Assembly: GCA_001643675.2 (NCBI GenBank)
Contig: LSRY02000029.1
Coordinates: 434,001 to 498,000 of the forward strand
Direction of reading: 5' to 3'
From: Monocercomonoides exilis PA203
Lineage: Eukaryota; Protista; Preaxostyla
DNA: 64,000 nt
A program made the translations under genes and the position numbers. Below, piece after piece: positions 36,995 to 39,900 of the stretch. How positions within the stretch are numbered: position 1 is the first letter of the stretch; the number at the start of each line of letters is the position of its first letter. The notes beneath the pieces are model-generated. The model saw only the letters and a list, made by a program, of their open reading frames with translations, was not told the DNA's origin and did no database searches.

Positions 36995-39900
36995 TTAATG
37001 GTGCCCAATAGGAATCTGATTGGCATGTGCCGTGATAGACGGAGAAAGCGTATACGGTGGAGAAGGCGAAGGCATCGGAACAGCAGGTGTGGGTGTGGGA
37101 TACGGCGAGGGCGATGCAGATGGTATTGAAGAATCCCACGAAGCAGCTGGCACAGGCCTCACAGATGAATGGTGGCGAGATGAGTGCCGTGGAGGAGACA
37201 CAGAGCCAGACGAAGAATGAGCAGGGCGGCTGGAGTGTGTGCGATGATGGCTGGTGTGGTGGCGGTAGTGACTCGATCTGCTTCTTCTGTCTCTGCTGCG
37301 ACTTCTGTTTCTGCTTCTGCTCCGACTCCGGCTTTTGGCAGGGCTTCTTGAGTCTCTTGTCCAGCTATTTCTTCTTTCTTGGCTGTATCCTCTGCTTCTT
37401 CCATGGCGAGATTCATTCTTCCTTCCTCTGCTGTAGCTTCGACTTCTGCTCCTGCTCCTATTTCTGCTCCGACTTCTGTCTCTGCTTTTGCTTCTGCTCC
37501 GATCAGGTGCTTTGCTTCTGCTGATTCCTGATGGCGGAGATCGCGTGCGATGACGAGAAACAGGGCTGTGTGAATTCCATCCATCAGATTGTGCCGGACT
37601 GACACTTCTGCGTGTGGCAGGTGCTGCGCTTGACTTCGCCTGCCAGTCAGATGCAGATGATGAAGAGGAAGAAGATGAAGAAGAGGATGAATATGACGAT
37701 GGCGCACCAAAGCCATATGCGCCAGAGGCAGAGGAACGTGCAGCATACGGGTCTCTGCTTCCATAAGAAGAAGGACCCATTCCACCATCAGACCCTGGGG
37801 GACGATAAATTTCATAGCTGTTTGGACCTGTGGCATAACTTGATCTGTATCCTCCTCTTCCTCCACCACTGCTATATCTTCCTCGCCCTCCTCCTCCACC
37901 TCCAAATCCTGAGCGCAATGATGCATATTCCCTCAGCCTCTGAGGAACCTGCTGTCCTGATTGTGAAATGACTTCAACAAGATCTTTCGCAAGACGTGCA
38001 TCTTCATCTGTGAAGAATGTCATGGATGTACCAGTCGATTTACCTCTATACACATTCATAGGTAGACGCATTGAAAGACAAATAGAGAATTAATGTTAAA
38101 TATTGATGATAATAAAAATGAAAGTTAAGGTTATTAATAAGTATTGTTAAAAACACAAACCTCGCAGTCCTACCAATACGATGTACATAATCCTCAATGT
38201 TTTTAGGTACATCGTAGTTAATCACATACTTAATATCACTCACATCTAAAGAGAATAAAAGATCATTGAAATGGAAAATAAAAAAAAAAAATACAAGTTA
38301 ACAAATTAATGAAAATAAATAAATAAAATAAAATAAAGCGTTCCCGCAAAAAATATGTAATTGATTTAAAAAAAAAATAAAATGTATGAAAATTAATCAG
38401 TTCAAATTCCACAGAGAAAGCAAGCTGATGAAAAGCATTCACAAAAATAATGAATTGCAAAACAAGTAATAAAAGCGATATTAAATATAAACTCAATGGA
38501 AGTAATGCAGAATTATGTGACACAAAAAAAGCTTGCCATATTACGTGACCAAGATCAGACCTTTTTTTCTCTTCTCATCGAATTAACAGTGAAAAAAAGT
38601 GCAATCAAGGAAAGATCATTGGCCATCGTCAGCAAGCCTGCAAGAATTCACGCTGCATTAGCTTTCACATTGGGTGTGCCTTTACTCTTTAAGCAATATA
38701 ATAAAACTATTTATTCATTATTAATGCTCATTTTTACACTATTCAATTCCAACACCCTATTTTCATTTCACACCAATCCCTCTCGATGCCACATCTGTGG
38801 CAATGCAGATGGATGACCGGCCCGATTTAAACTCAGCCATCACCCAGTCACGCTCCCCCTGAGACTTGTCTCCGTGGATAGACAGCGCAGGGAAGCCATT
38901 CGTACGCAGCAGCGTCGTCAGCTCGTCAGCCATCCTCTTTGTGTCTGTGAATATCAGGATACGCCCATCCCGCATGTTCTCCTCTAGAAAACTCACCAGC
39001 TTGTGCTGCTTCTCCATGATCGAGCAGAACGTAAACAGCTGAGTCACTCGTGCATTCGCACGTATCTCGATACTTCCGATATGGAAACGAACAGTCGTTT
39101 TTTGGTTTAAGAAATCAAAAGCCAGTTGCCTAATATCTTTAGGCCATGTGGCAGACCACATAAGAGTTTGCCTGTCTGGCCGAATTTGACTAACAATTTT
39201 GCGAAGCTGCTCTTCAAATCCCATTTCAAGTAATCTATCTGCCTCGTCAATAACAAGATACGTCACACGCTTCAGATTTGTGCATTGTGCGGAAATAAGA
39301 TCAATCAATCGTCCAGGTGTAGCAATAACTACTTCTACACCTTCTCTCAATTGTCGCATCTGAGGAACCTTTGAAACACCACCGTACAGACATACAGTTC
39401 TCACTCTTCCACAATATTTTCTCATCTCTGTTTCAATCTGTACTGCCAGCTCACGAGTAGGAGCCAAAACAAGCATAATTGGTCCATCTCCTCGACGAAT
39501 TGGAGGTTGAGCCAAAAGATGAGTGATTCCAGGAAGAGCAAATGCCAGTGTCTTTCCAGATCCTGTCTCTGCAATTCCAATAAGATCCCTTCCAGATAAA
39601 GCTGTTGGCCATGAAATCTGCTGGATAAGAGTTGGCTCTTTAAAGCCAGAGCGTGCAATGGCGTTCATGATATCTGAAGAAAAATTTGCATGTTCAAATT
39701 TCATGCAAGGTTTTGGAATGTTTTCTCCAATAGCAGTGACCTGATGCTCTCTGTAAAACCATTGGACATCATTTTCTGATAGGCGCGCAGTTTCAGGATG
39801 CTCAACATAAAAATCCTTTCTAACTGGAGGTGCATCAGAAAAATCTATATTTTGAGGAAGATTGGACCCAAGTCCGCCCATACGATCAAAACCTCCTCCA

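What the first reader, a model, noticed from the sequence alone, without database searches (positions are those of the whole stretch)
38504..38659. Concentric RNA hairpin in the DBP2 intron wrapping a candidate 77-nt poison exon
Seen (transcript sense) nested pairings: AAUGCAG/CUGCAUU (38659-53 with 38510-04), GUGA/UCAC, GCUUGC/GCAAGC (38637-32 with 38536-31), ACG/CGU, GGCCAAUGAUC/GAUCUUGGUC (38624-14 with 38556-47) and CUUUUUUUC/GAAAAAAAG (38599-91 with 38569-61), in a GC-richer island of an AT-rich intron. An acceptor-like UUCUUGCAG| sits at the base of the GCUUGC helix and a donor-like AAG|GUCUGA lies inside, defining exon 38637-38561 (77 nt). Inclusion shifts frame to AUG UGA in the next exon, upstream of another intron and before motif VI. 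Inference: a helicase-sensing RNA switch in which excess Dbp2 remodels the stem and triggers unproductive splicing/NMD.
Basis: partly seen in the sequence, partly recalled or inferred. Interest (0 to 1): 0.85.

Follow-up and report, generated by a model that had tools for sequence, protein, structure and literature searches.

The report
Hairpin masking DBP2 intron splice sites
In the mitochondrion-less protist Monocercomonoides exilis, a long intron of the RNA helicase gene DBP2 is predicted to fold into a hairpin that hides spare splice sites. It may let the helicase turn down its own production, as related helicases do in plants and yeast, but no transcript evidence supports this yet.

Summary
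The gene is the DBP2/DDX5 orthologue MONOS_8024 of Monocercomonoides exilis. The 528-nt intron after motif V sits where fungal and Blattamonas orthologues also have one. The hairpin is a solid prediction (-46.6 kcal/mol; 7 of 2000 shuffles as stable; 1 of 178 intronic windows as low). The hidden donor AAG|GUCUGA is a near-consensus site for this genome, but the acceptor is weak. Inclusion gives a stop 79 nt before the next junction, and UPF1, UPF2 and Mago are encoded. New here: the hairpin's 3' strand is also 15/16 complementary to the real 3' splice-site pyrimidine tract, a possible second state. The closest precedent is the land-plant DEAD motif in DRH1. This element would work like it but is not a member. 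Probability of a helicase-sensing role is about 0.45, and of the exact 77-nt cassette about 0.25. The scan noted a loosely similar structured intron island elsewhere in this genome (s1-465102, unchecked).

The parts
38774..40142 (-). DBP2/DDX5 (MONOS_8024) coding exon 1, ending in motif V (ASRGI, phase 1)
   Evidence: 100% identity to MONOS_8024.1 of M. exilis; groups with the Blattamonas Dbp2 proteins in a quick tree
38246..38773 (-). 528-nt motif-V intron (genome mean 119 nt)
   Evidence: Junction matches the annotated protein; recovered by a self-trained gene model that excluded this gene's splice sites from training; same position in Blattamonas and fungi; mean length from PMC8767320
38504..38659 (-). 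Interrupted long hairpin of stacked helices in a GC-richer island
   Evidence: -46.6 kcal/mol, z -3.5, 7/2000 shuffles, helix probabilities 0.7-1.0 except the apex
38638..38639 (-). Cryptic acceptor AG, paired at the base of the 10-bp helix; weak
   Evidence: 20th percentile of predicted real acceptors; equal decoys occur 2.3 times per 500 intron nt; pair probability 0.71-0.97
38653..38654 (-). Second possible acceptor AG inside the outer helix; use would give an immediate stop (GCG UGA)
   Evidence: 16th percentile; translation
38561..38637 (-). Candidate 77-nt poison exon (unproven)
   Evidence: Frame and stop checked; coding-likeness not significant, p about 0.10; no reads checked
38554..38563 (-). 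Cryptic donor AAG|GUCUGAU; -3..+1 and +5..+8 paired, +2..+4 in a 3x3 internal loop
   Evidence: 72nd percentile of predicted real donors (the intron's own donor: 64th); best internal GT by 3.7 bits; about 4% of intronic windows hold one as good; U1 duplex -5.4 against -8.2 kcal/mol for the main donor
38558..38573 (-). Purine-rich 3' strand of the hairpin, also complementary to the real 3' splice-site tract
   Evidence: Longest inverted repeat of the intron, 15 of 16 pairs including one G-U; duplex -18.2 kcal/mol
38249..38264 (-). Pyrimidine tract of the productive 3' splice site, the distal partner of 38573-38558
   Evidence: p 0.001 against shuffles, 0.013-0.03 against natural controls; the state is about 19 kcal/mol less stable than the hairpin state
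38161..38245 (-). Exon 2 (85 nt, motif VI); the stop reached after cassette inclusion is at 38242-38240
38046..38160 (-). Downstream intron (115 nt) whose junction lies 79 nt after the premature stop
   Evidence: same position in both Blattamonas genes
36995..38045 (-). Exon 3: end of the helicase domain, RGG and RS-rich tail (full protein 834 aa)

Best explanation
The hairpin is a lineage-specific feedback element in the old regulatory intron of DBP2. As the intron is transcribed, the local hairpin forms and hides a strong donor and a weak acceptor, so the intron is removed whole and full-length helicase mRNA is made (structure predicted; productive splicing shown by the annotated protein). 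When Dbp2 is abundant it opens the short helices (inferred, by analogy with plant DRH1 and yeast Dbp2). The pre-mRNA then goes to an unproductive fate: the 77-nt cassette, use of the cryptic acceptor alone, or retention of the intron, possibly helped by the freed purine strand covering the real 3' splice site (all inferred). Every such product stops before motif VI and more than 55 nt upstream of a later junction (shown by translation), so it would be removed by NMD or nuclear decay (inferred; UPF1, UPF2 and Mago are present).
For: Strand-biased, unusually stable fold. It is the only structured window of the intron and the lowest z among 7 long motif-V introns scanned. The intron's single near-consensus internal donor lies inside it. 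All unproductive products carry premature stops. NMD and EJC genes are present. The intron is 4.4 times the mean length and lies at a position shared with fungi and Blattamonas. The DBP2/DDX5 intron is reported as poorly spliced and helicase-dependently autoregulated in yeasts (PMC4695336). The same logic is shown by mutation and rescue for DRH1.
Against: Both Blattamonas co-orthologues have 43-44-nt introns here and lack the element. No homologous sequence was found, so there is no covariation. The acceptor is weak. About 4% of introns this long could reach such a z by chance, and the finding comes from a genome-wide scan. Two of six other long motif-V introns show no clear local structure. 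The splice-site models rest on 64 introns predicted by my own model, not on RNA data.
Confidence: 0.45

Rival explanations
1. Passive shield or zipper: the hairpin forms and is useful because it hides a dangerous cryptic donor and shortens a long intron, but Dbp2 levels do not control it.
For: In yeast introns, structure is enriched around cryptic splice sites and long stems are common (PMC12350175). The hairpin state dominates the ensemble and the alternative state has about zero equilibrium weight.
Against: A single substitution would remove the donor more simply than a 156-nt stem. The host is a helicase whose family is known for feedback through introns.
Confidence: 0.2
2. Chance: a GC-richer patch of a long intron folds well and happens to contain a donor-like word; nothing is selected.
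For: 2.5% of non-coding windows reach z <= -3.5 and about 4% of intronic windows hold an equally good donor. Absent from Blattamonas. The acceptor is no better than common decoys.
Against: Among intronic windows only 1 of 178 folds as well. The fold, the GC island, the best donor and the longest inverted repeat all coincide, in an intron with a prior reason to be regulatory.
Confidence: 0.25
3. The hairpin is an intron-encoded small RNA precursor, or the remnant of a foldback or MITE-like element, unrelated to splicing control.
For: The human DDX5 intron is reported to encode a miRNA (title cited in PMC4695336; paper not held). The window has several foldback elements.
Against: No Rfam match. 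No second copy in about 300 kb of this genome held locally. The fold depends on G-U pairs and is weak on the other strand, unlike the strongest foldbacks. A whole-genome DNA search was not run.
Confidence: 0.1

Closest known systems
DEAD motif of land-plant DRH1/RH14 and RH46 (Sack et al. 2025, PMC12218528; Burgardt et al. 2026, bioRxiv 10.64898/2026.01.23.701338)
   Same: [quoted passage not shown]
   Different: DEAD is a single 19-20-bp stem with a 3-5-nt loop, covarying in over 100 plant species, in intron 4 of DRH1. Here the structure is a 156-nt interrupted stem that wraps both splice sites, in the motif-V intron of a Dbp2 orthologue in a metamonad. A WW-domain plant DEAD-box gene examined (L124) has no intron at motif V. 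No conservation or function is shown here.
Conserved DBP2/DDX5 intron of S. cerevisiae, S. pombe and human (Iggo 1991; Barta and Iggo 1995; Moore 2011, as cited in PMC4695336)
   Same: Long intron in a Dbp2 orthologue, at the position shared with many fungal orthologues. From my own knowledge this motif-V position is the one those papers describe; I did not fetch the yeast or human gene.
   Different: There the reported outcome is intron retention and nuclear decay (Mmi1/exosome in S. pombe), and I found no defined hairpin or poison exon described. Regulation is untested here, and the intron has shrunk to about 44 nt in Blattamonas.
Structure-based splicing autoregulation with mutually exclusive folds, yeast RPL7B (PMC12311795, abstract seen)
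   Same: Two alternative intron structures, one allowing and one blocking splicing.
   Different: RPL7B is switched by binding of a ribosomal protein to a conserved fold. Here the second state is only a computed complementarity, about 19 kcal/mol uphill, and would need helicase work.

Membership tests
Plant DEAD motif | Single hairpin, 19-20-bp stem, 3-5-nt loop | tested here: not met
   156-nt stem of six or more short helices with internal loops
Plant DEAD motif | Alternative 3' splice-site AG paired at the stem base | tested here: met
   AG 38639-38 paired with probability 0.71-0.97 at the base of a 10-bp helix; met in form only, use not shown
Plant DEAD motif | Located in intron 4 of DRH1/RH46-type genes of land plants | tested here: not met
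   Host is an oxymonad Dbp2 orthologue, intron at motif V; the WW-domain plant gene L124 has no intron there
Plant DEAD motif | Covariation support across species | tested here: inconclusive
   No homologous hairpin to align; Blattamonas lacks the region
Plant DEAD motif | Helicase-dependent shift to NMD-sensitive isoforms | not testable with these tools
   Needs reporter or RNA data
Conserved DBP2/DDX5 intron | Phase-1 intron directly after motif V in a Dbp2 orthologue | tested here: met
   Same position in both Blattamonas genes, Neurospora, Linnemannia, Spizellomyces, Rhizopus and a plant-like contig; absent in Pythium, Gonapodya and the M. exilis paralogues L002 and L003
Conserved DBP2/DDX5 intron | Unusually long for the genome | tested here: met
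   528 nt against a mean of 119 nt (PMC8767320)
Conserved DBP2/DDX5 intron | Inefficient splicing and autoregulation | not testable with these tools
Poison cassette exon (AS-NMD) | Usable splice sites on both sides | tested here: inconclusive
   Donor 72nd percentile, acceptor 20th percentile of predicted real sites
Poison cassette exon (AS-NMD) | Premature stop more than 50-55 nt upstream of a later junction | tested here: met
   79 nt
Poison cassette exon (AS-NMD) | NMD machinery in the organism | tested here: met
   UPF1, UPF2 and Mago domains above Pfam cut-off; activity not tested
Poison cassette exon (AS-NMD) | Inclusion seen in transcripts, raised when NMD is blocked | not testable with these tools
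Poison cassette exon (AS-NMD) | Conserved in relatives | tested here: not met
   Blattamonas introns of 44 and 43 nt; no closer relative was available
Rfam families (snoRNA, miRNA, cis-regulatory) | Covariance-model match at the gathering score | tested here: not met
   No hit over the hairpin even at E 10

The most novel reading that the evidence does not exclude
A two-state switch in which Dbp2 both unwinds the local hairpin and re-anneals its purine-rich strand onto the productive 3' splice-site pyrimidine tract, shutting the real acceptor while freeing the cryptic one. Together with unrelated long hairpins seen in the same intron of a plant-like and a fungal orthologue, this would mean that a very old eukaryotic intron has repeatedly evolved different RNA sensors for its own helicase.
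Probability: 0.15. Interest if true: 0.72.

Novelty: new variant of a known kind. Interest (0 to 1): 0.45.

Why it matters
If true, feedback control of DDX5/Dbp2 through splicing would extend from fungi, animals and plants to Metamonada, a lineage best known for reduced splicing, and would be the first regulated unproductive splicing I could find described in an oxymonad (limited paper search). It would also give a concrete structure to test for the long-reported autoregulation through the conserved DBP2 intron. The principle itself is already established in plants, the element is missing from the one relative that could be read, and nothing is yet shown at the RNA level. That keeps the score moderate.

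Tried and rejected
To be careful I afterwards kept DNA of that stretch out of collection searches and worked beside it, so no whole-genome DNA search of the hairpin was run. Exceptions to declare: the exon-1 protein, which overlaps the stretch, had gone out and (same batch), and the public protein P0001 was looked up by id. The joined spliced models (productive or poison form) were not searched. Relatives: three homologue searches, one representative search and one metagenome scan gave only Blattamonas genomic loci and one spliced environmental transcript close to the oxymonad clade (P0023); no Streblomastix or Paratrimastix gene surfaced. No meaningful sequence similarity to hairpins in other species' introns. 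Barta and Iggo 1995 and Moore 2011 are not held and are cited second-hand.

Full report
Identity. The genome is 82.3 Mb in 101 contigs, which matches the nanopore assembly of Monocercomonoides exilis (PMC8767320), and the protein is 100% identical to MONOS_8024.1. The gene is on the minus strand: exon 1 40142-38774, intron 38773-38246 (528 nt), exon 2 38245-38161, intron 38160-38046, exon 3 38045-36995, giving 834 aa with an RGG and RS-rich tail. The annotated protein reads ASRGI-DVSDIK across the first junction, and a self-trained gene model recovered both introns. In a quick tree it groups with two Blattamonas Dbp2 proteins and one M. exilis paralogue at 96% SH-aLRT. The paralogues L002 and L003 lack the motif-V intron.

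The observation. The stretch folds at -46.6 kcal/mol, z -3.5, and 7 of 2000 shuffles fold as well. Within the whole intron the outer five helices have pair probabilities of 0.7-1.0. The GCUUGC helix is really 10 bp and includes the acceptor AG. The opposite strand is only z -1.7. As background, 12 of 475 non-coding windows of this genome reach z <= -3.5, mostly intergenic and often folding on both strands, but only 1 of 178 intronic windows. For an intron of this size that is about a 4% chance. There is no Rfam match and no second copy in about 300 kb of this genome held locally.

The splice sites. From 64 predicted introns the donor consensus of this genome is AAG|GUUUGA, with U at +4 in 88%. 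This fits the genome's U1 snRNA, whose 5' end reads ACAUACCUG instead of ACUUACCUG. The hidden donor AAG|GUCUGA scores at the 72nd percentile of real donors, above the intron's own donor (64th), and is the best internal GT by 3.7 bits. About 4% of intronic windows hold one as good. By U1 duplex energy it is weaker than the main donor (-5.4 against -8.2 kcal/mol). The acceptor at 38637 is weak (20th percentile), and a second weak one lies at 38652. These models come from my own predictions, not from RNA data. Cassette inclusion, use of either acceptor alone, and retention all give stops before motif VI; for the cassette the stop is 79 nt upstream of the next junction. UPF1, UPF2 and Mago are encoded.

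The longest inverted repeat of the intron joins 38573-38558 (end of the candidate exon plus the donor) with 38264-38249, the pyrimidine tract of the productive acceptor: 15 of 16 pairs, -18.2 kcal/mol. This is reached by 0.1% of shuffles and by 1-3% of natural controls. It excludes the inner hairpin and is about 19 kcal/mol less stable overall, so it would form only if the hairpin were actively opened. It is a lead, not a result: purine-rich against pyrimidine-rich matches are common in AT-rich DNA.

Relatives. Blattamonas nauphoetae has two co-orthologues (61-63% identity). Both keep the two introns at the same positions, but the motif-V intron is only 44 and 43 nt, with no room for the element. 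Both introns of the helicase region are short in both genes, so general intron shrinkage could explain the loss, but the element is plainly not required in all oxymonads. No closer species was available, so covariation could not be tested. Further out, the motif-V intron is 400-900 nt in six other orthologues. A plant-like contig (L018) and Linnemannia (L123) each hold a long hairpin with splice-site-like words in or beside the stem (z -3.8 and -4.9 at chosen boundaries), Rhizopus and Neurospora are intermediate, and two show nothing clear. None resembles the M. exilis sequence.

What is known. The land-plant DEAD motif is a 19-20-bp stem in DRH1 and RH46 that hides an alternative 3' splice site. 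Helicase activity shifts splicing to cassette, alternative-3' and retained-intron forms with premature stops, shown by disruptive and compensatory mutants. The DBP2 intron is described as conserved in position and length from yeasts to human, poorly spliced, and relieved of retention in a helicase-dead yeast mutant (PMC4695336). The M. exilis element fails the DEAD-motif membership tests on shape, host gene and lineage, but could work like it.

Limits. Joined spliced models were not searched. No whole-genome DNA search of the hairpin was run.

Verdict. The predicted hairpin with a buried strong donor is a real sequence feature in an intron with a good prior for regulation. Probability of a helicase-responsive splicing element: about 0.45. 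Exact 77-nt cassette as a real product: about 0.25. Passive shield 0.2, chance 0.25, other 0.1. Novelty: new variant of a known kind. Interest 0.45.

Noticed in passing
L128:1489-1530 (G000:C28:313530-313684, +): The single U1 snRNA found has a variant 5' end, ACAUACCUG instead of ACUUACCUG, complementary to the +4 U that dominates this genome's donors (consensus AAG|GUUUGA). It looks like U1/donor co-adaptation.
   Followed up: partly
window 3668-4013, 3024-3291, 56623-56796, 61909-61963 and 62204-62493: Long intergenic inverted repeats (arms up to 158 nt at 97%), foldback or MITE-like; they dominate the most stable non-coding folds of the window.
   Followed up: no
L018:1605-2126: A JGI contig of a plant-like Dbp2 (RH30-like, by my recollection of the sequence) in which exon 1 is uninterrupted up to motif V and the 522-nt motif-V intron is present, possibly a retained-intron transcript. 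The intron holds a 17-bp stem with two acceptor-like YAG words in its 3' arm (z -3.8).
   Followed up: partly
L123:2414-3317: The Linnemannia DBP2 motif-V intron (904 nt) has a long hairpin at intron nt 479-635 (z -4.9) with a CAG in the 3' arm and a GUAAG donor-like word at its base.
   Followed up: partly
L118:4001-6100 and L119:3833-5937: Blattamonas has two Dbp2 copies; both public gene models look wrong at the 3' end (one appears fused to the next gene, one reads into the second intron and is split).
   Followed up: no
L002 (G000:C69:1017422-1021249): A second, faster-evolving DBP2-like paralogue in M. exilis with an uninterrupted helicase region, possibly a retrocopy that escapes intron-based control.
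   Followed up: partly
window 6681-6836 (+): The only other predicted intronic window with z below -3.5 (-4.2), also strand-biased.
   Followed up: no
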